45,833 nt of DNA, from the NCBI GenBank assembly GCA_900088475.1, contig FLMG01001412.1, positions 1-45,833 on the forward strand, written 5' to 3'. The notes beneath the pieces were generated by a model, which saw only the letters and a program-made list of their open reading frames with translations, ran no database searches and was not told the origin of the DNA. This document shows positions 5,978 to 45,833 of the stretch, piece after piece. Each line of letters starts with the position of its first letter. Position 1 is the first letter of the stretch. Source of the DNA: Hyphochytrium catenoides. Lineage: Eukaryota > Protista > Hyphochytriomycota. Made by a program: the position numbers and the translations under genes.

Positions 5978-7502
5978 ATGACGAACAACAGAGGTACCAG
6001 GGTCAGTTTAGATCTCGGGCCCAAGAACCGAAGCTTCAAGGATATCCTCCTTGGCTATGATAACTCCAGCGTCCCCAATGCCGATAAAGGTCCGATTGCC
6101 TTGTGCGGCTGGCTATGGAAAATGAAGCGGAACGGGAAGATGGTAATAAGAACTTCGGCCTCCTCCTCTCAGCCTCGATTCTCTGTTGCTAAGGCCTGAG
6201 ACTCTCTTCTAGTTCCTGCCAGGCATGAACCGTCGCTGGTTTAGCGTGGAGGGCAGTGAGCTCAAGTACTATAACTCCAACAAATCAACAGAGCCCTCAG
6301 GTACTATCAGCCTGCTGAGCATCACGTCGATCAGGAAGTTTGCAGACAAGAACTCGGACTCCAAGCTCTTCAAGTCAGTAGCAGAACCTTTACCTCCTGG
6401 TTGACGGTGAAATCGATGCTGATCCACATTCAAATGGTTCTCTTTGTCCACTCTCCTGCAGCTTTGTCATCCAGTCAGAATCCCGTAGCTTCTTCCTCAG
6501 TGCAGAGACAGAGAGCGACATGAATCGATGGGTCAAAGGTCTGCGCCTGCAACAGGAACTATGGCAAAAGAAGCTCGATAAGAACGCAAAAAGTGACCAA
6601 AAGAGCGGCGCCCATAAGGCTAAGACGAAATCCCATGGAGCCACTCAGAAGAAGGAAACTAAGCAAAGGTCTCCGAGGTATGGTACCAAGATTGAAGTGT
6701 GTTGCAAGGGAGAGCCAGAGCCAGAGCATACGAGAGAAAGGGTTCACAATGACTTCTATCAGTATGCATACTGGATTAAGGGAGGATGTGGCTGACTGGT
6801 GGCACGAAAATGACTGAGTGTTGCTAAGCAGCTCCTTGGACACGTGGCGGGACTTTGACGCAGCGATGGAAGATATGGACAAGGCTGTAGGGAGCCGTTC
6901 AGGTACGCAGCAGCTACTGTGATATCTCTCTTGAGGCTTTCTCCAGGAAGTCCCCTCATTCTGTCTCCCTAAACGTGTATGCTGTGCTAATATTTTATCC
7001 TTTGTGGTATCATGAACAGACTCGGAAGACGAAGATAAACATCGCTCGCATCGAAACAACAGGGATAAAGAATGTAGCCCTAAGAATGACGGCAGTGGCT
7101 TTAGGAGGAGGAAGGAGCGAGCTCGTGATGAATGGAGTGATAGTGAAAGCGAGCAGTCAGCCTCCTCTCAAGAAGAGGACCAACACCAAGAACAGGTAGC
7201 TACATAGACTGACATCGGCCTCCAACGCGTGATGTCACACCTCGGAACCGTTGGCATCTATGTAGAGACGTGATCGGAGACCGCGGGAAGCTAATGGAAG
7301 ACGTCACAAACCACGTGCCAGACTACAAAGACCAAGAAGCCGCTCAGGAACTGGACGAGACCAGAAGGAGAGCGCGACAAATACATCATTACGCTCCCGA
7401 AGAGAAGGGGCATCGCCTTCTAGAAGGCAGGGAGCTGAACATAACGATAAGGATGGGCTAATCGTAGAAGACGCAGATGATTTCACCTTTTCGGAGGACT
7501 AG
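5978..7502 (+). CDS. PH-domain protein with a charged, disordered C-terminus
   Basis: Spliced: LCGWLWKMKRNGKM|FLPGMNRRWFSVEGSELKYYNS..PSGTISLLSITSI..|FVIQSESRSFFLSAETESDMNRWVKGL. This has the canonical PH pattern (GWLxK, RRWF, LxYY, C-terminal helix Trp). Later exons stay in frame to TAG at 7500-7502. Confidence 0.85.
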
Positions 7503-8227
7503 TATAATGGATCATTCTCTTGTCTTTAAGACTGAAGAATACACTTGACGTTAGTTCTGTGGCTGTTTTAATGTGCTGTTGAAACCTCGGAACCATTGAC
7601 TGGCCTGTCGTAAGAGGAACAGGCCGGCGGGTGTGCGTCACATATAGACAATTGCTATTGCCTTCATGGAATTTAAAAGCTGAGGTGAGTTCAGCAGTTC
7701 TTAGACAAAGACAAGATGCTAGACGGCTGCTTCTTATGAAAGGAACCCTGTTGCTTACATCATCATGGAACCCATGGGACCATAGTAAGGAGGATGCAGG
7801 ATCCTTCAAGCTATGCGGACAAGCGTTCAAAGCTTTTTGCTCTGAGCCATCTTCTCTCTGAGTCGGACCTGTTACTGACTTCATCGGCAGCCTGGGTTGG
7901 TTGTTCCCGTCAAGAGCCAAAGATAGTGAAAGAATCGCGAGGACTATTATGAAAAGCTCCGGTAGGAGTCCTGACCAAACATCGTCAGCGCTCATTAACA
8001 GTGATGGCCGCTGCGGTTCTTGCGGGTTTTTTCTCCGCCTGCTGTCTTTTTACTGGGCGATGGATGCAAGGAACCCTTGCCCCCTGTGATAGAACCTTCT
8101 TCACTAGTCGCACCACTCAAACCGCAACAAGAATTGAGCCCTCCATCTTCAAGGTATTAAGCATCATGCGATAGCCCTGACCCCATGTTGCGCCTCACGG
8201 CTTTAGCTCCCTTTAAAAGTCTCCACT

Positions 8228-9105: not shown

Positions 9106-12100
9106 ATGCTCCCAAAGTTTTTTATACTACTGGTCCTCTGCTCGCTCTGGCGACAAGGAGTAGGTGCTATGAGTTCTGAGGCCATAGACCTTGTTCCGGT
9201 CACAGCCTCAGCGATCCGGCTTAGACTTGAGCTTACCCTTGATACGCCCCTAGCGATGGGAGAGGCACTCACCCTCTCGCTCCCAGCTGAGCTGACATGG
9301 AATACTCCGCTCACGCTCTCGGTTCTCTCTAGTTTGCCTGCTGGCTCCACTGCTAGTGCTTCTGGGCAGGACGCCGTTATCACCGTGGGAGCAGGAGGCT
9401 GTCCATCTGGTGCCCTCATCGCTCTTACTTTGGAGACTCTGTCCATAGATCCCTCAACCAACCCTCCTACTCTGTCGTTCTCTCTCTCTACACCGTATGA
9501 GTTTGGTTCTCCTTCCATCAGAACGTTCCAGTTGTTCCAGGCAGAAGTAGCCTCCACCGTCTATGGGACAGCAGAAGAGGCCATCCTGACTGTCTCCTTT
9601 ACCACATTGGTGGAGAGCTGGGGTGACTTTGAGATCTTACTGGCCTCTAGTTCTCTCTCTGTGCCTTCAAGCCTCTCGCTTATCGCCAGCACTGGCTTCG
9701 ATGTTTTTACATCGGCCATCACCTGGGGAGCTGCAGGGGGAGACTTAGTCGTCCAAGTGGCTCCGTCAGCCATGGTGCCTCCTGGCTTTGTCTCTTTCAC
9801 GGTTAGTAGAAGCTATAGCCTGTGTGCGATGCGGTGGCTCAGCCTTGTCACCAACAGTCCTTTTCATTGTATCTTTGGTCCTGTCAACAAGCTCTTATTG
9901 GTGGCACTCTTCTGGCATTTGTCTTGTATTACTTCATACATATAATATGGCCACGTACCTATTGACCCTCCTTCATTTTATCTCCTTTTCTCTTGATCAC
10001 TCTTAGTTTTCCGGCGTCCAGAATCCAGCTGGAGCAGGCACCACGGGGGCCATCACGGTCCGAAGCAGGACTTTTATCTTTGGAGATACTGTGCAAGGGT
10101 CCACCCTACCAGGTCTCACCTATTGGTCCCCGAAAAGAGCGCTGGATGCAGAGATTCTCCTCTCTCCCTACTCACCGGAAGTGGCGGCGACACTTGCCGT
10201 ACAGCTGCGGAATGACGAAGAGTCACCGTCATGGCAGTACATCAAACTCACGTTTTACGCTGGTAACAACACTGTTCCTAGACCTTCCCTTCCCTCAAGT
10301 TGTCTATTATGTGCCAACTGACTAGGGCCTTTCTGCTGGTTTGCTAGTGGTCAAGGATCCTTGGACTCTTTCCTCTTCTCGTCGGTCCGTTCCTAATTCT
10401 GGTCTTACCAACACCCTACCATATAGCTGTCACCTGCAGTGTCTCCCTTGTCAACTGCTGCACTGCTGTTTTCTCTCTCTCTCTTCAATGCGACTGGCCA
10501 TGATGATGTTTGTCCGTCTTATGTTGCCTCAAGACTTCCCAGTCTCTGTGCTAACAGTCACTATTCCTCTACTCCAACGTTCAGATGCTTGGATAGTCAG
10601 CAGCATCAGTGTCTCGAGCACTTCAGGCTTCTCTGCCGTGAGCTTGACCACCTCCTCTCTCTACAGTGACAGCAATAGTCTCTCGGTGTTTGATGTCGTG
10701 ATTGAAGCATTCTTTCCTGCTTTCCCGACGGATTCCCTTCTCTCTTTCACCGTAAGAAGACTAATGATTGATGCCTGTCATCATCCACACTCTTTTTTGC
10801 GCTAGGTGACTTGCCACCATACTCTTTGGCCCTCTTTATCCCCTGAGAGCTCTCTTTCTTCTTACTTTTATGAGCCTCAGCATCCTTCTTTTCCTGTGCT
10901 TTCTTTTCCTGCTACTGAGTTATCCTTGGCATTGAGAAATAGACGCTGCTTTTGTTCTTGTCCAGTCTCGAGATACAAAGCGTTGCCATAACCATTCCTC
11001 GTCTGACTCCACCTACCCGCAACAGCTGGAAGGCGTGGACTATCCCCCCGTCACCATTGCCCCATCTACCACCTTCACCCTCTCTCTCCTGGACTCTCAG
11101 TCCAATACGCTTTCATCCCGCGGGCTGACAGGCAGTTTTCCTTATACTGCCAGCATCGACGAGCTCTATGCCTTCATGGTGAATCCGCAGGGAGGCAGGA
11201 CTGGAACTCTGGCTTTTAATCTAACAACGGGCGTGGACTATCCAGTTGGGAGCACTATCACCGTCATCCTCCCTCCACTCTTCTCTCTGGGAGCCACTCC
11301 TATAGTGGCCTACCACCGGCATATTTCTGCACTGACATCCATATCGTCAGTAGACCAGCTGAGAAGGTCCGTCACAATGACGGTGAAAGAGACCACAGGT
11401 GACGCAACATGTCTATCGTTTCCTTAGGTCCAGGCTTCCACTTCCTGGTCTAACCTTGTCCTCTCCACCTTTCCCTCCTTGGGATGTTGCCTCAGACCCC
11501 CACTTACTGAGTGTTTTTGACCATCAGGCGTTTTCCCTCCGCCGCCTCTCGTCGCTCGGCCTAGTAGATTCCGCTCATTTTGAACACCTTCTCTCTTGTC
11601 CCTCGTTGCATCGCTCCTGCCATTGTCCTATCAGTGACAGCGGGGAAGGATCGGTTCTTCGCAATGAACCTTGTGACGCCGCCCGGGACCTCTTGCGATG
11701 AGGAAGACGTTGACATTTGTGGTCAGAGGACAGACCCCTTTCTGGTGATGGTTAGGTAAGCTACCGGCTTGGCCAGTCATATTGCTCTCAGTACTCTCTG
11801 TTCCTGTCTTTTGTGTCTCCTCTCTCTATCACGTTTCCCCTTCCATGTTTCCTTCGTTACATCGTCCATCCAGTTTGTTCTCGGTCTCATCGCCACTTTT
11901 GCCATTGCTCCGGTCTAGGTCGCCTTCTACTGTCATCGATGTGATCTCAGTGCCTGGGGTTCGGCTCATCAAGAGCCCCTTACCTCCGGACACTTACGTT
12001 AGTCTTTCGGATACTCGGCCGCTGCAGCCTTCAATAGCAACAGTGGTAGGCTTCTTCCTGTGGGACTGATACCATTTAACTATCCTGAATGATTGGTCTT

Positions 12101-15058: not shown

Positions 15059-16253
15059 ATGGGAAGAGACTTTTATAAAATCCTTGGCGTCGACCGTAAC
15101 GCCTCCAGCGAGGACCTGAAGAAAGCGTACCGGAAGCTGGCTCTGAAATGGCATCCAGGTAAGCATTCAGCCTACGCAATAAGTCGTTTTTTAGACTCAG
15201 CTAGGACCTAACCTTCTTCCAATTGCAGATAAGAACCCTGACAACCAGGAAGAGGCACAGAAGAGATTTCAAGAGATTAGCGAAGCCTACGATGTTCTGA
15301 CAGACAAACAAAAGAGAGCGATCTACGATCAGTTTGGCGAAGAGGGACTAAAAGGTGGTGCTCCAGAGACTGGAGACAGTCCTGAGATGGATGGATTTGG
15401 TGGTGGCAGAATGCCCAGAGGATTCCACTATACCTCCGTAGACCCACGTAAGATTTTCGAGCAGTTCTTTGGGACTTCGAACCCTATGGAAGCCGAGGAC
15501 ATCTTTGGCTTCAGCGGGCCCTCGTTCTTCACAGGCACTCGAGGAGGCCGTGGCGGCGGTCCTGGCTTTACGACGTTTCAGACCTCATTTGATGGCATGG
15601 ATGGTATGAGGGGAATGGGAGGCATGGGAGGAATGGGCCGTAGAAGCAACTTTGGTATGGGCAACATGGGAGGTATGGACGGTATGGGGAGGCCTGGCAA
15701 GCCCGAACCAGTCATTCGTACTTTCCAGTGCTCGTTAGAAGAGTTGCTAACAGGCACAACGAAGAGGATGAAAGTAACGAAGAACGTCATAGACGCAAGC
15801 TCTGGCCGGTCCCTGCCGGTTGAGAAGATACTCGAGATCCAGGTCAAGCCAGGGTGGAAAACTGGTACTAAAATAACTTTTGAGGAGGAAGGCGACGAGA
15901 GGCCAGGAGAGAGACCTGCAGACATTGTCTTTGTCCTGGAGGAGAAGCCTCATCCACGATTTAGGCGGGATGGCAGCGATCTCGTCTACAAGGCACGGGT
16001 CACATTGGCTCAAGCGCTGACAGGCTTCAACCTTAGATTAACTCTGCTGGACAACCGTGAGCTGGACCTCAGAATAGACGACGTTATCACTCCTCAGGCC
16101 GTGAAAATTGTCAAAGGGGAGGGCATGCCGCACCAGAAGAATCTCCAGAGGCGTGGAGATCTGCGGATAGAGTTTGATGTCAAGTTCCCGACACGACTCA
16201 CACAAAGCCAGAAAGACCAAGTTAACATGGCTCTCCGCGGTGCAGTGTATTAG
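15059..16253 (+). CDS. DNAJB: Class B (type II) J-domain protein / Hsp40, Sis1/DNAJB1-like
   Basis: [24 protein letters not shown]|[25 protein letters not shown], with intron 15159-15228 splitting the HPD motif. G/F and G/M regions follow, then the C-terminal domains ([47 protein letters not shown]). No zinc finger. Confidence 0.97.
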
Positions 16254-23026: not shown

Positions 23027-23788
23027 TTAGCTGCATTTGGTGGTATACCTAACGTCCAAATGGCTAACACCATATCGAAGATAAAGATTCGCCTTATCTC
23101 CTCGAAGCTCAACTAAGCGCTGAGCATCTAAAGTGCCAATCTCATGAAACGCAACAGCGGTAAGAAGATGCCACATCGCGTGAAGTTGCGGATTAAAAGG
23201 CAACTTCTTGATAACCATGTTGCAGCCAAAGAGGTCCAAAGCCCATAAGGAGAAAGCGGATATGCTGATCACGATAATACGCCAGACATGTCTAGCAACA
23301 ACCGCAGAAGTTTTGTTGTTCAGGAAGAAGTGTCTATAAGAGATGCCCAGAGCCACAAAGAGAAGGTGCACCTCACAGAAGATCATCGAGATGACTATTA
23401 TCAGCATAGCGGACATCATGATATGAGCAAGCATCACCCATACTGAGAGTTTTGAGTGCATATAGAGCAGAGATACAAGGGCGGCAGTTTCCACCACTTC
23501 ATCAGCCTTTTGACCCCACCACCAGAGCGTTGCATGGAAAAACGCCGAAGCGATGCCGAGGAAGAGTAGAAGGCACCCAAAGAAGTAGTATTTGGTGCCC
23601 AACCGGTACCTCTTGGCACGTCTCAGGGCAGATATGCTTACCAACACGTAGGCGAGGTTTGATAAGGTGTTCCAAAACTCGGCAACAAAGTGTGACTCCT
23701 GATAGTCTTCCTCACACCAGTTAAGAGGTGCATTCGGCTTACCCCAGAAGCCTCGTAAGCCGACGCTTGGTATATGAGTGTGCGACAT
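23027..23788 (-). CDS. Alkaline ceramidase (ACER/YPC1, CREST family), intronless
   Basis: GFWGKPNAPLNWCEEDY..AEFWNTLSN, SAFFHAT, KADE and QLHAMWH motifs with multiple hydrophobic segments. The first ATG is at 23788; the ORF-track start at 23893 is GTG. Confidence 0.93.
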   Translation of the reverse strand: MSHTHIPSVGLRGFWGKPNAPLNWCEEDYQESHFVAEFWNTLSNLAYVLVSISALRRAKRYRLGTKYYFFGCLLLFLGIASAFFHATLWWWGQKADEVVETAALVSLLYMHSKLSVWVMLAHIMMSAMLIIVISMIFCEVHLLFVALGISYRHFFLNNKTSAVVARHVWRIIVISISAFSLWALDLFGCNMVIKKLPFNPQLHAMWHLLTAVAFHEIGTLDAQRLVELRGDKANLYLRYGVSHLDVRYTTKCS

Positions 23789-24555
23789 TTTTGCGGTACT
23801 AGATGGCGTTGGGGTTTGGTGCCCGAAAGAGATTGTCTTCACCCCAACCAAAGGGTATGGTGAGCTTCCAGACTGGTTAGCAGCTATGGCCACCTCTTGC
23901 TCGGGAAAGAGAGCACCTGAAGGAGTCCTCCAAACACAATAACAGCAGATACTCCGACTTAAGTCCTCGCCCTGCAGGTTGTCAGTAGTACAGACTCTAG
24001 CTTCCTGTCGGGAGGACCTTCAGTACGCAGAACAGAGACTTCCGGAGAATGGGAAGGTAGGAGAGCTTCGTGCCCGTTCAGTTCTCCCCTCAGGTCTGTC
24101 CCGCTGTCAGTGGCTCCCTTCTCTCTTCCTTCCTCACTGTCCTCCGTCAAGGCGCAGCCGTATATTCACCCGTCGTCACGTTTCATCCACCGCCTCATCA
24201 GCAACAAGCAAGGAGGCCACTGGCCACTGCCGTCGGTGCTGCTGCTCCCAACAACCGCCAGTCAGCCGAAAGGAAGCGGAACAGTGATTCACAGCCTTTC
24301 TCCATCAACTCCATAGTTCTAGATGACTTGTCCGTTGTGGTGACCACTCTGTCTTCCTCCATCCTTCCCTTCGTCGTTTCTCCCTCTAAGTTCCTCTTCC
24401 CATGTTTCTTGCTCTGTCTCGTCACGTCTCCTCCTCTCTCGTCAATCTGTTTCTGCATAGTGTAAAGGTTTTATCCTGGGAACAGCAGGGTAGTTTCCCC
24501 CATTATCTACCTCTTCAGATTCTGTCTTGGTTTGTATTCTTCCCCGTCGTCCTCA

Positions 24556-30658: not shown

Positions 30659-32964
30659 ATGGATCCAAAGCGGATCCAGGCTACAGGACGTCCTGGCCCC
30701 ACGATACTCTCCACACGAGGTGGGCAAGGAGGACGTAATACTGCTATGCAGATGCTCCTATTTCTGCTACTCGCAACAGTGCTTCAAGGAAGAGAGTGCT
30801 TTGGACAATCTGCTTCTGCAGCTAGCTGTTTATCAAAAGGTGAGCGCCGGAATCTGCTGTTGTTGCGCAGGAATTGCAGTGCCGTAACCTCCTGCCGCAC
30901 GCATTCCCCTATCACCGCCCCTACTTCTCTTAGCCCAATCCTCCCCTGCACAGCCACAATGGTTGCTCTTTCTGTGATCACTTCAGCTAGAAGCTTTACC
31001 TCATTCCTCTCTCTCCTTGTCTCTTCCACATCTATCTTGACTCAATAATGTCTACTGTTATGTTAACGTACAATGACTGTTCGACAGCTTCAGTGTCCCT
31101 GGTCGGATCCTCCGTTAGCGCGGACCCCGAACTGAGATGCCTGGTGTACAATGGGAAAGTGTTCATGAAACTGGACTCTACGAATCATGCTGTTGATTTG
31201 GCTAGCGATACTCCTGGCGTGACTTTGAGCTCCGCTTCAGGAACAAAGTCTTCAACTGCTGTGACCCCAACGCCTGGCAACGCATCCGCCAAAGAGGGAC
31301 AAGCTGGGGAAGGAAGAGAAGAGTCTTCGTCTTTTGAAGGGGATGGCAAGAACGAGAAGAGGAAGGGATACCTTGGTTATGAGACCCAGTGCGATGGCGA
31401 GGTAATCACGCCTAAGTGTGACCTGGAGCTGTTCTTGATCTATCTTGGCTCTGCCATTTTCGTGATCATGATGGCCGGAGTGATGGCAGGGCTTACAATG
31501 GGCTTCATCTCTCTTGACAAAATGAATCTGCGGATTCTTCAGCTCCAGGGAAACAAGGAGGATCGGACAGCAGCGAAGAGAGTGTTGGCGGTGGTGGGGA
31601 GGCATCATCTCCTCCTTGTCACGCTACTCATTTGGAACTCTCTAGCCAACGAGACCCTTCCTATTGTGCTGGATCGGCTCTTTGATCCAATAACCGCTGT
31701 TATTATCTCCATGTCTTGCGTGCTGCTCTTTGGTGAGGTGATCCCCTCGGCTATCTTCACGGGCCCAAGACAGCTGTACATCGCTGCAAGGATGGTGCCA
31801 GTCATAGAATTTCTTCTTATCGTCACTATGCCCATAGCTCTCCCTCTTAGCAAGGGTCTGGACTATTTGCTGGGCACTCATGATATCACAAGGTATAATA
31901 GGAACGAGCTGAAGGCCCTCATCTCTATTCAAAAAGAAGTTTTTAGCGATATTGAGACGTTGCTAGAAGATGACTCAGAAGAGCAGGACAGCGACAGTAC
32001 GAAGCGAAGGAACACGCACCTCGAGGCATCTCTGCTTGTAGAAGAAGTGAACATCATCCATGGAGCGCTCGACCTGGCCACCAAGAAAGTGAGAGACATA
32101 ATGATTCCTTGGTCCAGCTGCTATACGCTGGACACGAAGACCACGTTGGACTACAAGATAATGAGTGAAATCCTGGCCACCAACCATACGCGGATTCCCG
32201 TCTTTGAAGGTGACAAGAACAATGTCCGGGGGCTCCTAATCACCAAGCAGCTAATCATCGTGGACCCGAATGAAAAGGTCAAGACGGATTCTCTTACTAT
32301 TATTCCTGCTCTACGCGTCCATCCAGAGGACGGGCTATATCATGTCCTGACTGTCTTCGAGCAAAATAAATCCCACATGGCCCTGGTCACGCAGGAGCCA
32401 GAGTTGGTTGGAAGGCTATGGGCAGGTAACCAGCCCCTTGATCCCAAACAGGTGACGATTGAAGGCATTATCACCCTAAATGACATCATCACCGAGCTGA
32501 TGCGGAAAGAAATACTTAGTGAATCTGACCATCACCGAATCTCTTCGAAGATCTCTAAGGTCTTTATGCAGAAGCATGATAAGAATCAGCCAGATGCGCA
32601 GCTAAAGCAGAGGAGAAGCGCCAAGGAGGCACCAACAGAGCGTTCACCGACAACACAATCTTCTTCAGGCGACGTTGCGCACAGGCCGTCCGACGGCAGT
32701 CGGGGCCCCTCCGATCGAACAGTCTCGATTCTCACTCACTCAACGCAGAGCGCTCTCTCTACGACCACCACCGCGACAGGCATCGCGCGGCAGTCGATAG
32801 ATGGGAAGAAGAATAGCCCTCTGGAAGCTTTGGGCATTTATTCGACCTCGAGTGGGACCGATAGTACCACGAATGGCATTTTTTTCTCGAAAGGCGGGAT
32901 GTCCAGTGCACAAAGCGGCATGTCTTCCGATACAAAGCCTCTTCTTGGAACCAAAACGCGATAA
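30659..32964 (+). CDS. CNNM/CorC-type metal (Mg) transport protein: DUF21 plus CBS pair, with N-terminal signal peptide
   Basis: AGVMAGLTMGFISLD, HHLLLVTLLIWNSLANETLPI.LD, VLLFGEVIPSA, YNRNELKALI, IIHGALDL, HTRIPVFE, SHMALV and GIITLNDII. Exon 1 carries MQMLLFLLLATVLQG and joins in frame over an intron at about 30840-31088. Confidence 0.95.
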
Positions 32965-34399: not shown

Positions 34400-36378
34400 A
34401 TGAGCAGGAATAACCACTTTGCCGCTGATCTTGGGGAAGAGGCAGGGCTAGGTCGGATCGTGAGTGACGATTTCCTGACAGACCTACCTCTGGGCCTGAT
34501 TGACTCATGCCTGTACAATGAGCTCAACTATGATGGTCAGCCATCCGCTGCACCTAGCACTTATGCCGGGTGTCCGCAAGACTTACTCGGGGATATTAAC
34601 GTAGCTTTGGGATACGGTCGAACTCACTCCCCTACTACTGTCCCTATTAGCGGCAGTACAGCCCATGAGCAAGCTCCAGCTCCACAGCCTGGAGTATTCA
34701 GTGGGCCCGCCAACGGCAATGTTGGAGACTCAAGGCCCAAGAAGAGGTTGGAGGAGGACACCTATGAGCGTAAGAAGGACAGGGCAAAGTTCTCTCGAAA
34801 AGAAGTGAAAGACCGCTTTGAAGAACTGTCAAAGCTCATCGAAGCCCCTCCAGGTTTGTTTGCCACTTGTTTGGACATTTTGAATGCACTAACCGCTGGA
34901 TTGCACCGCATGGGTCTGTCATCCGTCGTTGCACGTAGCTTATCGAAGGGCAAACAAAGCCAAACTCATCGAGGCCACTATTGAGTATATAACCAAGCTG
35001 AAAGCACGACTAGCTCGGGCGGAAGATGAGGTAAGCTTGACAGTGTGGATGCATTCCAAACCTAACGACTCTCATTAGCCCATGACTTTTCACCGTCTAG
35101 TTATTAGGACTTTCATCCGTTCAGTGGCTTAGTCTCAGATTGTACTCATGACTTCGCACTAATTTCCTCTTGATATTGCAGTTATGTCAACACAAGGAGG
35201 TTGACGGCAGCACATCTTCGACTAAGGTTGTCACACAGAAGGTTGCAGTGGTTCCTGCCTATGCGCCTCAGAGCCATTCTACTCCAGTGATGATGCTGTC
35301 TCCTACGACCCCTGGAGGAGTCTGGAGCCTACGACCCTTCCTCAACCTCCCCTCTCACCCTATTCTTTCCCCTCAAATGCAGTCTTCTCCTCTCTCTTTT
35401 GATCCTAAGCTTTATGGGTGCCCGCCTGCTGGAAACAACGGCAATATAGTGCCAAATGTCGTTCTTGGGCCAACTACAAGAGACGATACGATGCCGCCGC
35501 AAAGCGCAGCCGGCAGGAAGCGTCCATTGCGAAGTTTTGGAACTCCAGAGAACGGGGTCGTGGCAGCCAGGGAGCATCCTCACTTATCTCTTATAATGGA
35601 GACGTTCTACGTATTGAGCCTACTGGACAGCGTGACACTTGCAAATTGCACTAGAGTTAACCGTCATTGGAACCGGCTCTGTACCAGGAACTTTATATGG
35701 AAAGGTCTCTGTCAGAGTCGATGGTGCTGGAGCGCGGCAGATCTGAAGAAGGCGAAAATCAATCGTTACATCACGCTGTACGGCTATCTTCATGAGACGA
35801 TAGAGCCTCCTAAAACGTCCTCTTACGAGCAGGAGCTGAGCGCCTCACCTGTCTTTGCCTCGGGTCGGGCTGGGGTAAAGGTGGGAGGCTGGCTCTTCCT
35901 GGGCCACAGGTCAAACAGCCGAACACTACGGAGTGTTATGGTCAACGGAGCCCTTAGGACGATGGAGGTAGTGGAGCTCAGGCTTCTCGTCCAGAATCTC
36001 AGCGATGGCAACGTTGACTTTGACCTATCTTCCCTGGCTGTAGCTGGAGCCGATACTCCTTTCCAAGTCCTTCTGAGCTCAGATCTCTTCCAGCCGCGAT
36101 TTGTCTCCCATACCAGAGGGTTTACTTCTCCTGTTCTCACAGATAGGAGACGGTGCCCTTTAAGGGCTTACGAGACAGGGGTTATTAGCTTCTACGTGCT
36201 ATGTCCCGGATCTGAACTTGAGATAGACTTTCTCATGAAAGCTCACGTGGTTCAGTGCAGCTTCCAGTTCAGCTCTGGTATGACAGGAGAGCCAGAGGAT
36301 GGTGTCTTAAGATGCCAGTTGCCAGACGCGGCCAGGCTCAGAGAGCTGTACGGCAGCGCTTATTTGTTGCCTAAATAG
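34400..36378 (+). CDS. bHLH-like plus F-box fusion protein with an uncharacterised C-terminal beta-rich domain
   Basis: Three exons: YERKKDRAKFSRKEVKDRFEELSKLIEAPP|AYRRANKAKLIEATIEYITKLKARL (helix-loop-helix), then VLSLLDSVTLANCTRVNRHWNRLCTRNFIWKGLCQSRW (F-box). Both introns are GT-AG and frame-preserving. Confidence 0.82.
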
Positions 36379-42149: not shown

Positions 42150-44596
42150 ATGGGCCGTAAGAAGGGGTATTCGCATCTGGCCCTGTGGATGTGCGTCGTG
42201 GCGCTCCTGGCCTCCGCTGGGGCTTCTGGTGATTGGCAGAGTACTATGTGGTCGACCTTTGGCAAAGTTAGAGATGTGCTTGATGGTGCTCGGCATGCAA
42301 CTAGTGAAGCTATGAAGAATGTCTTAGGGTTAGGTAAGGCGGGAGTAGTCCTTAGGTCTTTCAGTCAGACACCCTCTCTAAGCCTCATTTCTTAGACTAT
42401 TGTGAGTACGTCGAGGAGCCCGTTAAGTCCGTGCGCTCTCTCCTGTCAGAGCGCCTTCGAGGCCAAGATATTGCAATGGATGTCATGGTAGCAGCTATTG
42501 AGGCGTGGGAGTTCAAGTAGGTCGCTTATAGCATTCTTCTTCCGACGCAAATCACATGCCGTCACAGCATCACCTGAACCAATCTCTTTGTCCTTTCCCC
42601 CTGTCATTACTCTCCGTGAGGCAGCCGCCATAGCGAGACTAAGGGTCGGCCATTGACAATGGCCTTCACAGGTCCAACGGGAGTGGGGAAGACTGAGAGT
42701 TCCTACCTCATTTCGGAAGCTCTTTTCAAACATACCCGGGCACACCGCGGAGAGCTGCGAGGGATGAAGGGGTTGCTTGTCTTTCGGTAAGAGGCTTGAG
42801 GCAAACGTGGTGAGATCTGAACTGATGCGCATCCTCGGCCTCTCTCCATACTTCTTCAGTGGGGAGGATTTCATGGATACCAAGGACAATCCGCTCAGCC
42901 GCTATCACGATCAGATCAAAACAAGGTATTGGGCCTTAAACTCTCTGTGTCCCTCCGTAGACTGTCGTATAAACTTCCATCAATTAGGCTGAGAGATCAC
43001 TTGGCTAAGTGTGAGGGACGCACCGTGGTTGTGTTTGATGAAGTACAGAAGGTGGTGCCTCATACGCTCGATGGTACGGTCCTCATACTGAGTCTGTACC
43101 GGCCAGTTTATTCAGACCATCGCTCTGTCTTTTTCCGCCGCTATTCACACTTTTCTTGCTGCTTCTTTAGCTTCCAAACTGCTCTTCTTCGCTCCCGGAA
43201 TTGGTGAGGCTATCGAGGACTATTCCAACTCTTCTATGCCTTTCTTTTCGAGGTCTGCTATTGATGAGGTCCTAACCTACATGCGCAGTTCTGATTGAAC
43301 CCATGAGCGATCAAGCGCAGTTCACTTACTACCACGAGAGTGAGAAGAAGGCTGTCACTTATGATACAAGCAAAGTGGGTTCCTCATCCTTACTGTCCGT
43401 AAGCACCTTGATAGACAAGGACCTCTGTTGCTGCTTCTCGTCTGGCTGCCACTTCCGCGGCTCCTTCTGGAGCTTCCCTCTCTTTGCTCCCGCTTCGAGG
43501 CTCGACGTCCTTTGATAAAAGGTTTTCCTGCGATTCTAACCAATATTTCAGGTCATCTTCATACTTATATCGGACATTGGGGCAGACAGGATGCTGAGAC
43601 TGATCATTGAGAAAGGCAGTCGGGAGAAAGTTCCTATGGTACCTTCAGTATTCTCCTTGATTATCTCTCTGCAAAGCTCGTAGACCTTCCTTTGCCACGC
43701 TGGCATAAGCTATGGACTCACCTAAGCTCTTCTTTGTCTGGTATCACGTTGAGTAGGAGGATTTTCGGAGAGTAGTGAAGGATGCACTGGACAGCCAATG
43801 GCAGAGGTTGCAGTTTGGCAAAGTAATTGACGAGGTAATCTAACACACAACATCCAGAGTCTACTGGTCACGATGCTGGGAGGCCGTCTCTCACAGTCTC
43901 TTATAGGTGGTGCCCTTTCTCCCGTTAGAGCAGGAGCACATAATTTCTATTATAGAGCTGAAGCTGCAGGAACTCGATTATCTGAACCGAAACAAGTACT
44001 GGCGAGTGCTTAATGCCACGGTGAGCTCCTCTTTGTGATGGTTCTTCTCTCTACTAGCTGTCTCTATACTACGCTTCCGCTTTGAACCTCTGGGTCCGTT
44101 TGGCAAGCGACATGCAAGCCCTCCACTCTAGCTGCTTGACAACTCCCTAGCCTCATTCTCCTAAATTGCGTCCTTGCCTTATCTGTCTCTCCGATGGCGC
44201 TTAGTGAGCTTGACCTTTTATGACCCATGGCAGGATCCGGACTTTGTCCGTCACCTTTCGACTCCAAAGTTCATCACGTATATCAACGCCTCATTGCCAG
44301 GCCATAGAGGACAGATCGTTTTTGCAAATTATGGGGCAAGGAACATTGCTGTGGGCGGACCTCTACATAGGCTCAAAGCCAAGCTCTTCCGCTATCTTCA
44401 ACCTCCTAACCCGGCAGCAGATGTGGTATTGAGCTTTGATGCTGCTAGCCAAGAAGTGAAAATAGAGTCGTGCCTTTCCCAACCTCAAGACCAAAGGGTT
44501 TGCAGCTCAATAGGAGGCAGCGAGGTCTGTGAAGCACAACCTTCAACGCAAGAGACCGTCATGGAATGCATCACAATGTGGATGGGAGAGTTATGA
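42150..44596 (+). CDS. Torsin-like single-module AAA+ ATPase with N-terminal signal peptide
   Basis: Ten exons. Signal peptide LALWMCVVALLASAGASG, LRGQDIA, PLTMAFTGPTGVGKT (Walker A, 42671-42694), VVVFDEVQK (Walker B), VIFILISDIG (sensor-1 position), VIDE|VVPFLPLEQEHI and FANYGARNI (sensor-2 position). Confidence 0.88.
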
Positions 44597-45294: not shown

Positions 45295-45833
45295 ATGGAC
45301 TGGCTGGGGCGCCTGGTAGGCAGCTCATCCTCCCAGCTGCCGTATGAGATCGGTCCGACAGCAGATGATCGTTTCAATGGAGGTCTAGCCAAATGGGAGC
45401 TCAGAAGGGGCTCCAAAAAAGACGGTCTGGGCACGAAGGTGTCCATTTTCAAGTATGACAAGACCAAGTCATCCCCCTCAACCCTGGCAATCGCTCAGAA
45501 CGCACTCCGCCGCATGAAAACTTTACGGCACCCGAACACGCTTGCCTTTCTGGTAGGCCTCGCATGATTAAGCCACGCCTTTGCACCGCCTTCTATAGCT
45601 CTCTTGCCTTGCTCTTGCTCTCATCAACCGCCCTATCCTTTGTTGTTTGCGGCCGTATGTGTTCAGCCCTCGATTTTCTGTCTCGCCTCTGGTCTTGTAC
45701 ATGGTATCCTTCGAGCCTATTCACAGGAAATGCATATTTTGGCTGTCTTTGACTGGGTTAGGATGGCATTGAGAGCGATAAAGAGATCATTATAGTTACA
45801 GAGGAAGTCACGCCTTTGGCAGCGGTGATCTCG
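45295..45833 (+). CDS. SCYL1: SCYL1/Cex1-like pseudokinase, 5' part (runs off the window)
   Basis: LPYEIG..WELRRGSKK..VSIFKYD..AQNALRRMKTLRHPNTLAFL|DGIESDKEIIIVTEEVTPL is the typical SCY1-family N-terminus. Confidence 0.9.

What the first reader, a model, noticed from the sequence alone, without database searches (positions are those of the whole stretch)
42150..44596. Secretory-pathway Torsin-like ATPase with ClpB-type motifs in a non-animal eukaryote
Seen in sequence: signal peptide, one AAA+ module and Torsin-like segments (L.GQ.IA, PL.M.F.G, FDE..K, VPFLPLE..H). Walker A is canonical (GPTGVGKT) and sensor-2 is YGAR. Established knowledge: animal Torsins have GKN and GCK at those sites, lack the arginine finger, need LAP1/LULL1, and are related to the second nucleotide-binding domain (NBD2) of ClpB/Hsp104, which has GPTGVGKT, GAR and the arginine finger in NRID. 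Here the equivalent site reads KVID (no Arg) and the sensor-1 Asn appears to be Asp (ISDIG). Inference: an ER/nuclear-envelope ATPase intermediate between ClpB-NBD2 and Torsin that should need an unknown trans-acting activator. It may be an under-described protist Torsin system.
Basis: partly seen in the sequence, partly recalled or inferred. Interest (0 to 1): 0.8.

Follow-up and report, generated by a model that had tools for sequence, protein, structure and literature searches.

The report
Secreted-pathway Clp/Torsin-type ATPase gene
A real ten-exon protist gene encodes a signal-peptide-bearing, single-module ATPase from an unstudied family (water moulds, brown algae, unnamed protists) that mixes features of the bacterial-type ClpB/Skd3 protein disaggregases and the animal Torsins and, like the Torsins, lacks the arginine that normally triggers ATP hydrolysis.

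Summary
Window 42150-44596 (+) splices into a 448-aa protein from 10 exons with 9 GT-AG introns.

It is a full-length member (488 bits) of a conserved family found in oomycetes, brown algae and many unnamed protist sequences. A few database records are auto-named "Torsin". I found no paper on the family.

Across 51 relatives:
- The Walker A Lys, Walker B Asp-Glu and sensor-2 Arg (YGAR) are invariant.
- Sensor-1 is Asp in 50 of 51.
- The residue aligned to the human CLPB/Skd3 arginine finger (R561) is never Arg. It is Val287 in the window protein.

The family sits in the twilight zone of both Pfam models: Torsin 28-40 bits and AAA_2 31-37 bits, against a cut-off of 27. By sequence profile and predicted fold it is closer to Skd3 and ClpB NBD2 than to TorsinA. 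[quoted passage not shown]

So "intermediate between ClpB NBD2 and Torsin" is supported, and "it is a Torsin" is not. Nuclear-envelope location and the need for a partner that supplies the arginine remain inference. I could not fetch animal Torsin sequences, so the decisive tree was not built.

The parts
42150..42333 (+). Exon 1. Start codon, predicted signal peptide (aa 1-25, window 42150-42224) and the start of an N-terminal helix.
   Evidence: An in-frame stop lies one codon upstream of the ATG. Hydropathy peak at aa 10-24 and an AGA|SG site. Donor TAG|gtaagg. Relatives begin the same way.
42396..42516 (+). Exon 2. Conserved Cys64 (42401-42403) and the helix before Walker A, with LRGQDIA...AIEAWEF.
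   Evidence: Aligns to CxF/YVxxP...L.GQ..A...V.AIE.WEF in all relatives. Cys is nearly invariant (C58 of P0038).
42625..42786 (+). Exon 3. Strand beta1 (PLTMAFTG), Walker A GPTGVGKT (42671-42694; Lys124, Thr125) and strand beta2 (GLLVFR).
   Evidence: Walker A Lys is invariant in 51/51 relatives. The acceptor at 42624 was chosen by phase and length; 42633 is an in-frame alternative.
42860..42925 (+). Exon 4. GEDFMD...NPLSRYHDQIKT, the shortened pore-loop region with a near-invariant Tyr.
   Evidence: The family profile has a 6-residue deletion where Skd3 has its IGSPPGYVGHEEGG pore loop. Tyr is at least 90% conserved (Y166 of P0038). This stretch is matched by the Pfam Torsin model in relatives but not in ClpB or Skd3.
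42988..43073 (+). Exon 5. Conserved Cys186 (43010-43012) and Walker B VVVFDEVQK (43025-43051; Asp195, Glu196).
   Evidence: Cys, Asp, Glu, Gln and Lys are invariant in 51/51 relatives. Skd3 also has this Cys.
43289..43374 (+). Exon 6. Pre-sensor-1 beta-hairpin (VLIEPMSDQAQFTYYHESEKKAVTYDTSK).
   Evidence: tblastn with P0005, P0003 and P0002. The AlphaFold2 model of relative P0038 shows strands 212-217 and 220-225 here.
43552..43638 (+). Exon 7. Sensor-1 strand VIFILISDIG (43555-43581), with Asp243 where ClpB, Skd3 and Torsin have Asn.
   Evidence: Asp in 50/51 relatives. It aligns to Skd3 N496, the sensor-1 residue.
43757..43834 (+). Exon 8. Helix ending in QWQRLQFGKVIDE. Lys286 (43820-43822) and Val287 (43823-43825) occupy the arginine-finger site.
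   Evidence: Family Met/Val aligns to Skd3 R561, the arginine finger. No Arg at this position in 51/51 relatives. Lys at the preceding position in 36/51.
43907..44020 (+). Exon 9. VVPFLPLEQEH (strand beta5 and the start of the small domain) and an NAT sequon at Asn326.
   Evidence: P-x-L-P is invariant or nearly invariant. Skd3 has the related YFLPF. Sequon.
44234..44596 (+). Exon 10. Rest of the small domain, sensor-2 YGAR (44330-44341; Arg364), a family-specific Cys-containing beta tail ending ...CITMWMGEL, and the stop codon at 44594-44596.
   Evidence: The representative search with this piece recovered the family. Arg is invariant in 51/51. Tail Cys and W-x-G are conserved. The model of P0038 has strands 384-423 here.

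Best explanation
The gene encodes a soluble AAA+ ATPase of the secretory pathway, most probably in the endoplasmic reticulum lumen. It has one nucleotide-binding module of the Clp/Hsp100 NBD2 type (HCLR clade). It belongs to a conserved but uncharacterised family found in oomycetes, brown algae and other, unnamed protists.

Shown here:
- Gene structure and family membership.
- An N-terminal signal sequence or signal anchor conserved across the family, and conserved cysteines.
- A complete ATP-binding and hydrolysis core: Walker A Lys/Thr, Walker B Asp-Glu and sensor-2 Arg.
- Three departures from ClpB and Skd3: no arginine at the finger position, Asp instead of Asn at sensor-1, and a shortened pore-loop region.

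Inferred mechanism:
- The protein binds ATP and assembles into ring or spiral oligomers, as its relatives do.
- Its own subunits cannot supply the arginine that stabilises the transition state, so hydrolysis is slow.
- Hydrolysis would then be gated from outside, most likely by a lumenal partner that inserts a basic residue into the composite site, as LAP1 and LULL1 do for animal Torsins.
- This would make the protein a regulated remodelling switch for lumenal or membrane-bound clients, not a free-running threading disaggregase.

In evolutionary terms it looks like a stage between a ClpB/Skd3-type NBD2 and the animal Torsins, or a parallel version of that change.
For: Gene model:
- 10 exons, all introns GT-AG, one open frame.

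Family membership:
- 487.9 bits over HMM positions 5-434 of 440.
- 32-46% identity to members.
- The family including the window protein is one side of a branch with 100/100 support against Skd3 and bacterial ClpA/B/C NBD2.

Distribution:
- Pythium, Phytophthora, Peronospora, Albugo, Saprolegnia, Aphanomyces, Ectocarpus, Ascophyllum, Scytosiphon, and many unnamed metagenome or EukProt proteins.

Secretory targeting:
- Hydrophobic N-terminus in the window protein and in 39 of the 47 relatives in the census; most of the rest are probably truncated gene models.
- Some relatives carry a type II signal anchor instead.
- Conserved Cys at four positions and two N-glycosylation sequons.

Catalytic census:
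- Walker A Lys 51/51.
- Walker B Asp-Glu 51/51.
- YGAR Arg 51/51.
- Sensor-1 Asp 50/51.
- Arg at the finger position 0/51.

Residue equivalence with Skd3 N496 and R561 comes from HMMER alignments. The roles of those residues come from PMC11975511.

Fold:
- AlphaFold2 model of relative P0038: pLDDT 92.6.
- Best Foldseek PDB matches: Skd3 and ClpB NBD2, E about 1e-17.

Torsin-like traits:
- The Pfam Torsin model matches relatives over positions 11-127 at 28-40 bits. In ClpB, ClpA and Skd3 it matches only positions 13-82 at 12-26 bits.
- 6-residue deletion at the pore loop.

The precedent for trans-activation is TorsinA with LAP1 and LULL1 (PMC4999309, PMC4358337).
Against: - No partner is known and none could be searched for. 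Only 46 kb of this genome is available, and its neighbours gave no lead.
- A Lys sits directly before the finger position in the window protein and in 36/51 relatives. It might serve as an in-house finger.
- The strictly conserved Walker B Glu and sensor-2 Arg show that hydrolysis matters, but not how it is triggered.
- There is no KDEL/HDEL-type tail, so ER retention is unexplained. The compartment could be another part of the endomembrane system.
- Sequence and fold place the family nearer to Skd3 and ClpB, which are self-sufficient hexamers, than to TorsinA.
- The structure prediction was done on a 46%-identical relative, not the window protein, and only as a monomer.
Confidence: 0.55

Rival explanations
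1. A self-sufficient lumenal unfoldase or disaggregase. The protein forms homo-hexamers like Skd3 or ClpB NBD2. The conserved Lys next to the lost arginine (Lys286) acts as a lysine finger, and the conserved Tyr of the shortened pore loop grips substrates. No partner is needed.
For: - Closest solved relatives by sequence and fold are Skd3 and ClpB NBD2.
- Walker A, Walker B and sensor-2 are intact in 51/51 relatives.
- Lys at position -1 of the finger site in 36/51, plus Arg in 2 and Lys at the finger position itself in 3.
- A near-invariant Tyr aligns within one residue of the Skd3 pore-loop Tyr.
Against: - 10 of 51 relatives have no basic residue at either position (GL, SV, AV, QN, QA), so the Lys is not a family constant.
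- The pore-loop segment is 6 residues shorter than in Skd3. In the model of P0038 the Tyr lies in the first turn of a helix, not in a loop.
- Sensor-1 Asp puts a negative charge where the gamma-phosphate is sensed.
Confidence: 0.25
2. An ATP-binding but essentially non-hydrolysing scaffold or regulatory subunit. In this reading the protein is itself the non-catalytic partner of another ATPase, and nucleotide binding only controls assembly.
For: - No arginine finger and an Asp at sensor-1 across the family.
- AAA_2 scores have fallen to 31-37 bits, against 175-244 in working ClpB and Skd3.
Against: - Walker B Asp-Glu and sensor-2 Arg are invariant in 51/51 relatives. This is unexpected if hydrolysis were dispensable.
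- Known non-catalytic partners such as LAP1 and LULL1 have lost their Walker motifs (PMC4999309).
Confidence: 0.1
3. The N-terminal signal directs the protein somewhere other than the ER lumen, either into a complex plastid or its periplastid space, or out of the cell.
For: - Many stramenopiles import plastid proteins through the ER using a signal peptide.
- There is no KDEL/HDEL tail.
Against: - The family is present throughout the plastid-less oomycetes.
- The residue after the likely cleavage site is Ser, with no transit-peptide-like extension before the conserved domain.
- An ATPase would have no ATP supply outside the cell.
Confidence: 0.07
4. An ordinary organellar or bacterial ClpB fragment, a contaminant, or a gene-prediction artefact.
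For: - The Walker A and GAR motifs are ClpB-like.
- Pieces of the gene give no significant Pfam hit on their own.
Against: - Nine spliceosomal GT-AG introns in a eukaryotic gene neighbourhood.
- 488 bits to the family HMM, against about 100 for Skd3 and 82 or less for bacterial ClpB.
- The family is monophyletic at 100/100.
Confidence: 0.02

Closest known systems
Human CLPB / Skd3 nucleotide-binding domain (mitochondrial intermembrane-space disaggregase; PDB 7TTR, 7US2, 7XBK)
   Same: - Best solved match by family profile (101.9 bits) and by fold (Foldseek E 3e-17, TM 0.72 on the target length).
- A single NBD2-type module.
- Walker A G-x-x-G-x-GKTE.
- A Cys just before the Walker B strand.
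- hhhFDEV-x-K Walker B, and a pre-sensor-1 hairpin.
- An FLPF/FLPL motif after the finger helix.
- YGAR sensor-2.
   Different: - Skd3 has ankyrin repeats and mitochondrial targeting; this protein has a signal peptide and no ankyrin repeats.
- Skd3 has sensor-1 Asn496, arginine finger Arg561 and a GYVG pore loop. Here these are Asp243, Val287 and a segment 6 residues shorter.
- Skd3 scores 175 bits on Pfam AAA_2 and has ClpB_D2-small. Family members score 31-37 bits and no D2-small is detected.
- The family adds a Cys-containing beta tail.
ClpB / Hsp104 / ClpC second nucleotide-binding domain (NBD2)
   Same: - HCLR-clade fold.
- GPTGVGKTE Walker A and GAR sensor-2.
- Profile scores of 60-80 bits.
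- Foldseek E about 1e-16 to 1e-17.
   Different: - No NBD1, N-domain or M-domain.
- No arginine in the N-R-I-D position.
- Asp instead of Asn at sensor-1.
- No GYVG pore loop.
- Secretory rather than cytosolic or organellar targeting.
Animal Torsins (TorsinA, PDB 5J1S, 6OIF; Pfam PF06309)
   Same: - Signal sequence, so lumenal topology.
- A single AAA+ module.
- No arginine finger.
- No canonical pore loop.
- A Y-x-x-Q...C...hhFDE stretch between Walker A and B that the Pfam Torsin model matches over its full length in relatives.
- VPFLPLE.
- TorsinA is a significant hit to the family profile (63.1 bits, E 2e-16).
   Different: - Torsins have Walker A GKN, a Gly-Cys-Lys sensor-2 paired with a second Cys near the adenine, sensor-1 Asn and a three-helix small domain (PMC4999309).
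- This protein has GKT, YGAR, Asp and, in the model of a relative, an alpha/beta small domain with an extra beta tail.
- TorsinA ranks below Skd3, ClpB and ClpC in profile score and is not among the 50 Foldseek matches listed.
- Torsins are described as metazoan proteins that always occur with LAP1 or LULL1 (PMC7175109). No such partner is known here.

Membership tests
Uncharacterised signal-peptide AAA+ family of oomycetes, brown algae and other protists (alignment A2) | Full-length match to the family profile and placement inside the family clade. | tested here: met
   487.9 bits over HMM positions 5-434 of 440; the HMM was built without the window protein. The family including the window protein has 100/100 support. 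Identity to members is 32-46%.
Uncharacterised signal-peptide AAA+ family of oomycetes, brown algae and other protists (alignment A2) | The family's invariant residues: Walker A Lys, Walker B Asp-Glu-x-Gln-Lys, sensor-1 Asp, P-x-L-P, YGAR, and conserved Cys before the module, before Walker B and in the tail. | tested here: met
   All are present in the window protein: K124, D195/E196/Q198/K199, D243, VPFLP 292-296, R364, and Cys at 64, 186 and in the tail at 408/418/427/440.
Torsin (Pfam PF06309; animal Torsins) | Pfam Torsin model at or above its gathering score of 27 bits. | tested here: inconclusive
   Five relatives score 28.3-39.7 bits over model positions 11-127, only just above the cut-off. 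Its Walker A exon alone gives 15.3 bits.
Torsin (Pfam PF06309; animal Torsins) | Signal sequence with a lumenal AAA+ module. | tested here: met
   By hydropathy and the -3/-1 rule. Conserved in 39 of the 47 relatives in the census. Localisation was not tested experimentally.
Torsin (Pfam PF06309; animal Torsins) | No arginine finger. | tested here: met
   Val287 aligns to the Skd3 R561 position. 0 of 51 relatives have Arg there.
Torsin (Pfam PF06309; animal Torsins) | Gly-Cys-Lys sensor-2 with a paired conserved Cys next to the adenine (PMC4999309). | tested here: not met
   Sensor-2 is YGAR in the window protein and Arg in 51/51 relatives. No conserved Cys lies in the small domain before it.
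Torsin (Pfam PF06309; animal Torsins) | Non-canonical Walker A ending GKN.
   GPTGVGKT in the window protein. Thr or Ser follows the Lys in 51/51 relatives.
Torsin (Pfam PF06309; animal Torsins) | No pore-loop consensus. | tested here: inconclusive
   There is a 6-residue deletion where Skd3 has GYVG. But a near-invariant Tyr remains within one aligned position of the Skd3 pore-loop Tyr.
Torsin (Pfam PF06309; animal Torsins) | Dependence on a LAP1/LULL1-type activator that supplies the arginine. | not testable with these tools
   Only 46 kb of the genome is available, and there is no biochemistry. No AAA+-like neighbour was found.
ClpB / Hsp104 / Skd3 NBD2 (Pfam AAA_2 PF07724 with ClpB_D2-small PF10431) | Strong AAA_2 match plus a ClpB_D2-small domain. 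| tested here: not met
   Relatives score 30.8-37.4 bits on AAA_2, against 175-244 bits for Skd3, ClpB and ClpA. D2-small is detected in those proteins but not in the family.
ClpB / Hsp104 / Skd3 NBD2 (Pfam AAA_2 PF07724 with ClpB_D2-small PF10431) | Canonical Walker A (GKT), Walker B (DE) and sensor-2 (GAR). | tested here: met
ClpB / Hsp104 / Skd3 NBD2 (Pfam AAA_2 PF07724 with ClpB_D2-small PF10431) | Sensor-1 Asn, a cis-encoded arginine finger and a GYVG pore loop. | tested here: not met
   The window protein has Asp243, Val287 and a shortened loop. The family census and the Skd3 alignments agree.

The most novel reading that the evidence does not exclude
The family may be the surviving non-animal form of the lineage that gave rise to Torsins. 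On this reading, a ClpB/Skd3-type NBD2 moved into the ER lumen and lost its arginine finger and pore loop before the Walker A and sensor-2 changes seen in animals. Two consequences would follow. Gating of a lumenal AAA+ ATPase by an outside activator would be older than animals. Stramenopiles would also encode an undiscovered, non-LAP1 activator, with the family-specific sensor-1 Asp perhaps pairing with the partner's basic residue.
Probability: 0.25. Interest if true: 0.8.

Novelty: new variant of a known kind. Interest (0 to 1): 0.58.

Why it matters
Torsins are the only AAA+ ATPases known in the ER and nuclear-envelope lumen. They are linked to DYT1 dystonia, their substrates are still unknown, and reviews treat them as metazoan proteins that always occur with LAP1 or LULL1 (PMC7175109).

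The family found here is lumenal and lacks the arginine finger, yet keeps an otherwise canonical ClpB-type active site. It occurs in oomycetes, which can be manipulated genetically, and in brown algae. It therefore offers:
- an outgroup for reconstructing how Torsin's unusual active site arose;
- a simpler system in which to ask what a lumenal AAA+ protein without its own arginine finger does and what switches it on;
- a natural test of whether Asp at sensor-1 and Lys beside the finger site can support hydrolysis.

If it turns out to be only a divergent ER-resident Clp-type chaperone that works on its own, it would still be, to my knowledge, the first ER-lumenal Hsp100-type machine outside animals.

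Tried and rejected
1. Pfam on the ten stop-to-stop pieces gave nothing significant. The exons are too short, and the spliced protein could not be submitted because it has no reference.
2. Fetching animal Torsins for a tree failed.
   - A full-length search with P0005 and a Walker-B-to-C-terminus profile search at E up to 10 returned family members and then ClpA/B/C and CLPB, but no Torsin.
   - The reason is probably the 8000-candidate word filter, since TorsinA scores 35.5 bits against the same profile in the PDB search.
   - A short-region query would not have reached Torsins either: P0038:181-320 finds no TorsinA at E up to 10.
3. Organism identification failed.
   - Five window ORFs are absent from the protein collection.
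   - The DnaJ ORF has one unnamed 70%-identical relative. Otherwise it reaches at most about 60% identity, and about 50% or less to named organisms, which include amoebae, oomycetes, plants and Cafeteria.
   - The organism is therefore a poorly sampled non-animal eukaryote. Stramenopile affinity is only suggested by the family's distribution.
4. Screening 28 ORFs for a partner or other functional lead (8, 20 more) gave only CNNM, F-box, DnaJ and ceramidase hits, none AAA+-like, and no Pfam hit for the other 20.
5. I rejected 'VPFLPLE and the Cys before Walker B are Torsin-specific', because Skd3 has both.
6. I rejected the conserved Arg six residues upstream (QWQRL) as a substitute finger. It aligns to an Arg that ClpB (from my own knowledge of the FRPEF motif) and Skd3 keep in addition to their finger.
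7. Model coordinates are not exposed, so I could not measure distances, such as possible Cys pairs or where Lys286 points.
Full report
**Observation.** The + strand between 42150 and 44596 has no long open frame, only a chain of short stop-to-stop pieces in alternating frames. Proteins recovered with the last piece served as guides in a tblastn of the region. I then inspected every junction.

- The pieces join through nine canonical GT-AG introns of 62-215 nt into one 1347-nt frame.
- Exons: 42150-42333, 42396-42516, 42625-42786, 42860-42925, 42988-43073, 43289-43374, 43552-43638, 43757-43834, 43907-44020 and 44234-44596.
- Its first 25 residues form a basic n-region, a 16-residue hydrophobic core and an AGA|SG site. 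This is the most hydrophobic 15-residue segment of the protein. The only other 19-residue hydrophobic window is the buried sensor-1 strand.
- Two junctions have a nearby in-frame alternative. No RNA evidence was available.

**What it is.** Searched alone, the pieces say nothing. The C-terminal exon, however, finds a set of 420-520-aa proteins, and searching with one of them opens a family.

- All major oomycete genera are represented: Pythium, Globisporangium, Phytophthora, Peronospora, Albugo, Lagenidium, Saprolegnia, Achlya and Aphanomyces.
- A profile search adds brown algae (Ectocarpus, Ascophyllum, Scytosiphon, Discosporangium) and many unnamed metagenome, Logan and EukProt sequences.
- Names given by the sources are 'hypothetical protein', 'AAA+ ATPase domain-containing protein' or 'conserved unknown protein'. 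Two Phytophthora records are called 'Torsin' and 'Torsin-2A'.
- The spliced window protein aligns end to end at 32-46% identity.
- It scores 487.9 bits over positions 5-434 of a family HMM built without it. Skd3 scores about 100 bits and bacterial ClpB 82 or less.
- In a maximum-likelihood tree (LG+C20+F+G4, 80 rows by 344 columns) the family including the window protein is separated from Skd3 and bacterial ClpA/B/C NBD2 with 100/100 support.
- The window protein lies outside both the oomycete and the brown-alga subclades.

The rival 'ordinary ClpB fragment' is therefore refuted.

**Organism.** The window is an intron-rich eukaryotic region of about 50% G+C. It carries CNNM, F-box, DnaJ and ceramidase genes.

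- None of five ORF products is in the 15-billion-protein collection.
- The DnaJ ORF has one unnamed relative at 70% identity. Otherwise it reaches at most about 60% identity, and about 50% or less to named organisms, which are scattered protists, plants and a few fishes.
- The source is a poorly sampled non-animal eukaryote. Stramenopile affinity is only suggested by where the family occurs.

**Anatomy of the family.** The census is across 51 relatives.

| Feature | Family (51 relatives) | Window protein |
|---|---|---|
| Walker A G[PS]TGxGK[TS]E | Lys 51/51 | K124, T125 |
| Walker B | Asp-Glu 51/51, followed by invariant Gln-Lys | D195, E196 |
| Sensor-1 | Asp 50/51 | D243 |
| Sensor-2 YGAR | Arg 51/51 | R364 |
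| Arginine-finger position | Met 22, Val 12, Ala 6, Leu 5, Lys 3, Ile 2, Asn 1; never Arg | V287 |

- The residue before the finger position is Lys in 36 relatives and Arg in 2. Ten relatives have no basic residue at either position.
- Equivalence with a characterised enzyme comes from HMMER alignments to human CLPB/Skd3.
- Chain position 329 of 7US2 is the E455Q Walker B mutation, which fixes the numbering offset at 126.
- With that offset, the family Asp aligns to N496 and the family Met/Val to R561.
- PMC11975511 names N496 as sensor-1, R561 as the arginine finger and R620 as sensor-2.
- Relative to Skd3 the family lacks six residues at the IGSPPGYVGHEEGG pore loop. A near-invariant Tyr remains (Tyr171 in the window protein's SRYHDQ).
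- 39 of the 47 relatives in the census have an N-terminal hydrophobic segment, and most of the rest look like truncated gene models. Some relatives instead have a long N-terminal extension followed by a signal anchor. None ends in KDEL or HDEL.
- Four cysteine positions are conserved: before the module, before Walker B, and two in a family-specific tail ending C-x3-W-x-G.
- An AlphaFold2 model of the Saprolegnia relative P0038, built with the 51-sequence alignment, is confident (pLDDT 92.6, pTM 0.87). It shows the AAA+ large domain with a pre-sensor-1 hairpin and an alpha/beta small domain extended by a beta tail.

**Relationship to known families.**

- *Profile against the PDB.*

| Solved protein | Full-length family profile, bits |
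|---|---|
| Skd3 | 101.9 |
| ClpB NBD2 | 80.4 |
| ClpC | 75 |
| TorsinA | 63.1 (E 2e-16, one stretch over the whole module) |
| Hsp104 | 60 |

  The C-terminal-half profile and a single sequence give Skd3 first and TorsinA below ClpB.
- *Fold.* The best Foldseek matches are Skd3 and ClpB NBD2 (E about 1e-17, TM 0.7-0.78 on the target length). TorsinA is not among the 50 matches listed.
- *Pfam.* Relatives score 28-40 bits on Torsin over model positions 11-127, and 31-37 bits on AAA_2. Both cut-offs are 27.
- *Reciprocal control.* Skd3, ClpB and ClpA score 175-244 bits on AAA_2. They score only 12-26 bits on Torsin, confined to model positions 13-82, and they carry ClpB_D2-small, which the family does not.

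So the family has left the ClpB sequence model almost as far as a Torsin would. It alone matches the Torsin model through the stretch between Walker A and Walker B.

They do not discriminate.

The Torsin hallmarks described in PMC4999309 are absent: the Gly-Cys-Lys sensor-2 with its partner Cys, and the three-helix small domain. So is the GKN Walker A.

My reading is that the protein works partly like a Torsin (lumenal, no finger, no canonical pore loop) but is not a member of the Torsin family as that family is defined. It is also not a working-type ClpB or Skd3 NBD2.

**Mechanism.**

- *Shown:* a lumenally targeted AAA+ module with a conserved ATP-binding and hydrolysis core and no arginine at the finger position.
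- *Inferred:* ATP-dependent oligomerisation with hydrolysis gated from outside, by analogy with Torsin and LAP1/LULL1 (PMC4358337, PMC4999309).
- *Main rival:* a self-sufficient hexamer that uses Lys286 as a lysine finger. The Lys is common but not universal, which weakens this reading without excluding it.
- *Weaker rivals:* a non-hydrolysing scaffold is made unlikely by the invariant Walker B Glu and sensor-2 Arg. Plastid targeting is made unlikely by the family's presence in plastid-less oomycetes.
- Nuclear-envelope location is untested.

**Novelty.**

- Reviews state that Torsins and their cofactors are found in all metazoans and that no known Torsin has an arginine finger (PMC7175109).
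- Four full-text searches found no paper on a stramenopile or other protist Torsin-like protein.
- The family is visible in databases but undescribed. The window gene is one more member, from an unsampled lineage.
- Against characterised systems it is a new variant of a known kind.

**Limits.**

- No animal Torsin sequence could be brought in by reference, so the decisive Torsin/Skd3/ClpB/family tree was not built.
- The structure is that of a 46%-identical relative, modelled as a monomer.
- There is no RNA, localisation or biochemical evidence.
- The rest of the genome, where a partner would be sought, is not available.

Noticed in passing
window 31048-32964 (+): A 638-aa single open frame with a CNNM transmembrane domain (92.9 bits) and a weak CBS domain. 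This is a CNNM/CorC-type putative Mg2+ transporter.
   Followed up: partly
window 15387-16253 (+): A 288-aa ORF with a DnaJ C-terminal domain (130 bits). Its best database relative is an unnamed 358-aa protein at 70% identity on a 4.3-kb Logan contig. Everything else is about 60% or less, and named hits (about 50% or less) are scattered over amoebae, oomycetes, plants and Cafeteria. This suggests the source organism has no close sequenced and annotated relative.
   Followed up: partly
window 23027-23893 (-) and 35170-36378 (+): An alkaline ceramidase-family ORF (127.9 bits) and an ORF with an F-box-like domain (29.5 bits).
   Followed up: no
window ORFs 31048-32961, 34400-34981, 9106-9942, 7486-7995, 15387-16250: None of these five exact translations is in the 15-billion-protein collection. 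Twenty further ORFs of 90 aa or more have no Pfam hit. The genome appears unannotated in public protein sets, and most genes here are split by introns.
   Followed up: partly
window 45295-45567 (+): A new ORF starts about 700 bp downstream of the ATPase stop codon (MDWLGRLVGSSSSQLPYEIG...). It has no Pfam hit as a piece and is probably the first exon of the next gene.
   Followed up: no
relatives P0049, P0050, P0060 (metagenome proteins): These family members have a 70-80-residue N-terminal extension followed by an internal hydrophobic segment, instead of a cleavable signal peptide. They would be type II membrane-anchored versions with the same lumenal module.
   Followed up: partly
relatives P0017 and P0035 ([Pythium] brassicae, locus tags PybrP1_004887 and PybrP1_004889): Two paralogues have near-adjacent locus tags; both list the same longest-contig length (110780), consistent with one contig. 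Peronospora effusa also has two copies (P0029, P0042). P0042 is the only family member with His instead of Asp at sensor-1.
   Followed up: no
human CLPB/Skd3 chains 7TTR and 7US2, compared with the family: Skd3 shares with this family, and with Torsins, a Cys just before the Walker B strand and an FLPF/FLPL motif after the finger helix. The E. coli ClpB sequence as I recall it lacks both. This hints at a eukaryotic subgroup of NBD2-type modules, but I did not test it. In the careful tree Skd3 is the nearest outgroup, with only weak support (79/49) and a long-branch warning.
   Followed up: partly
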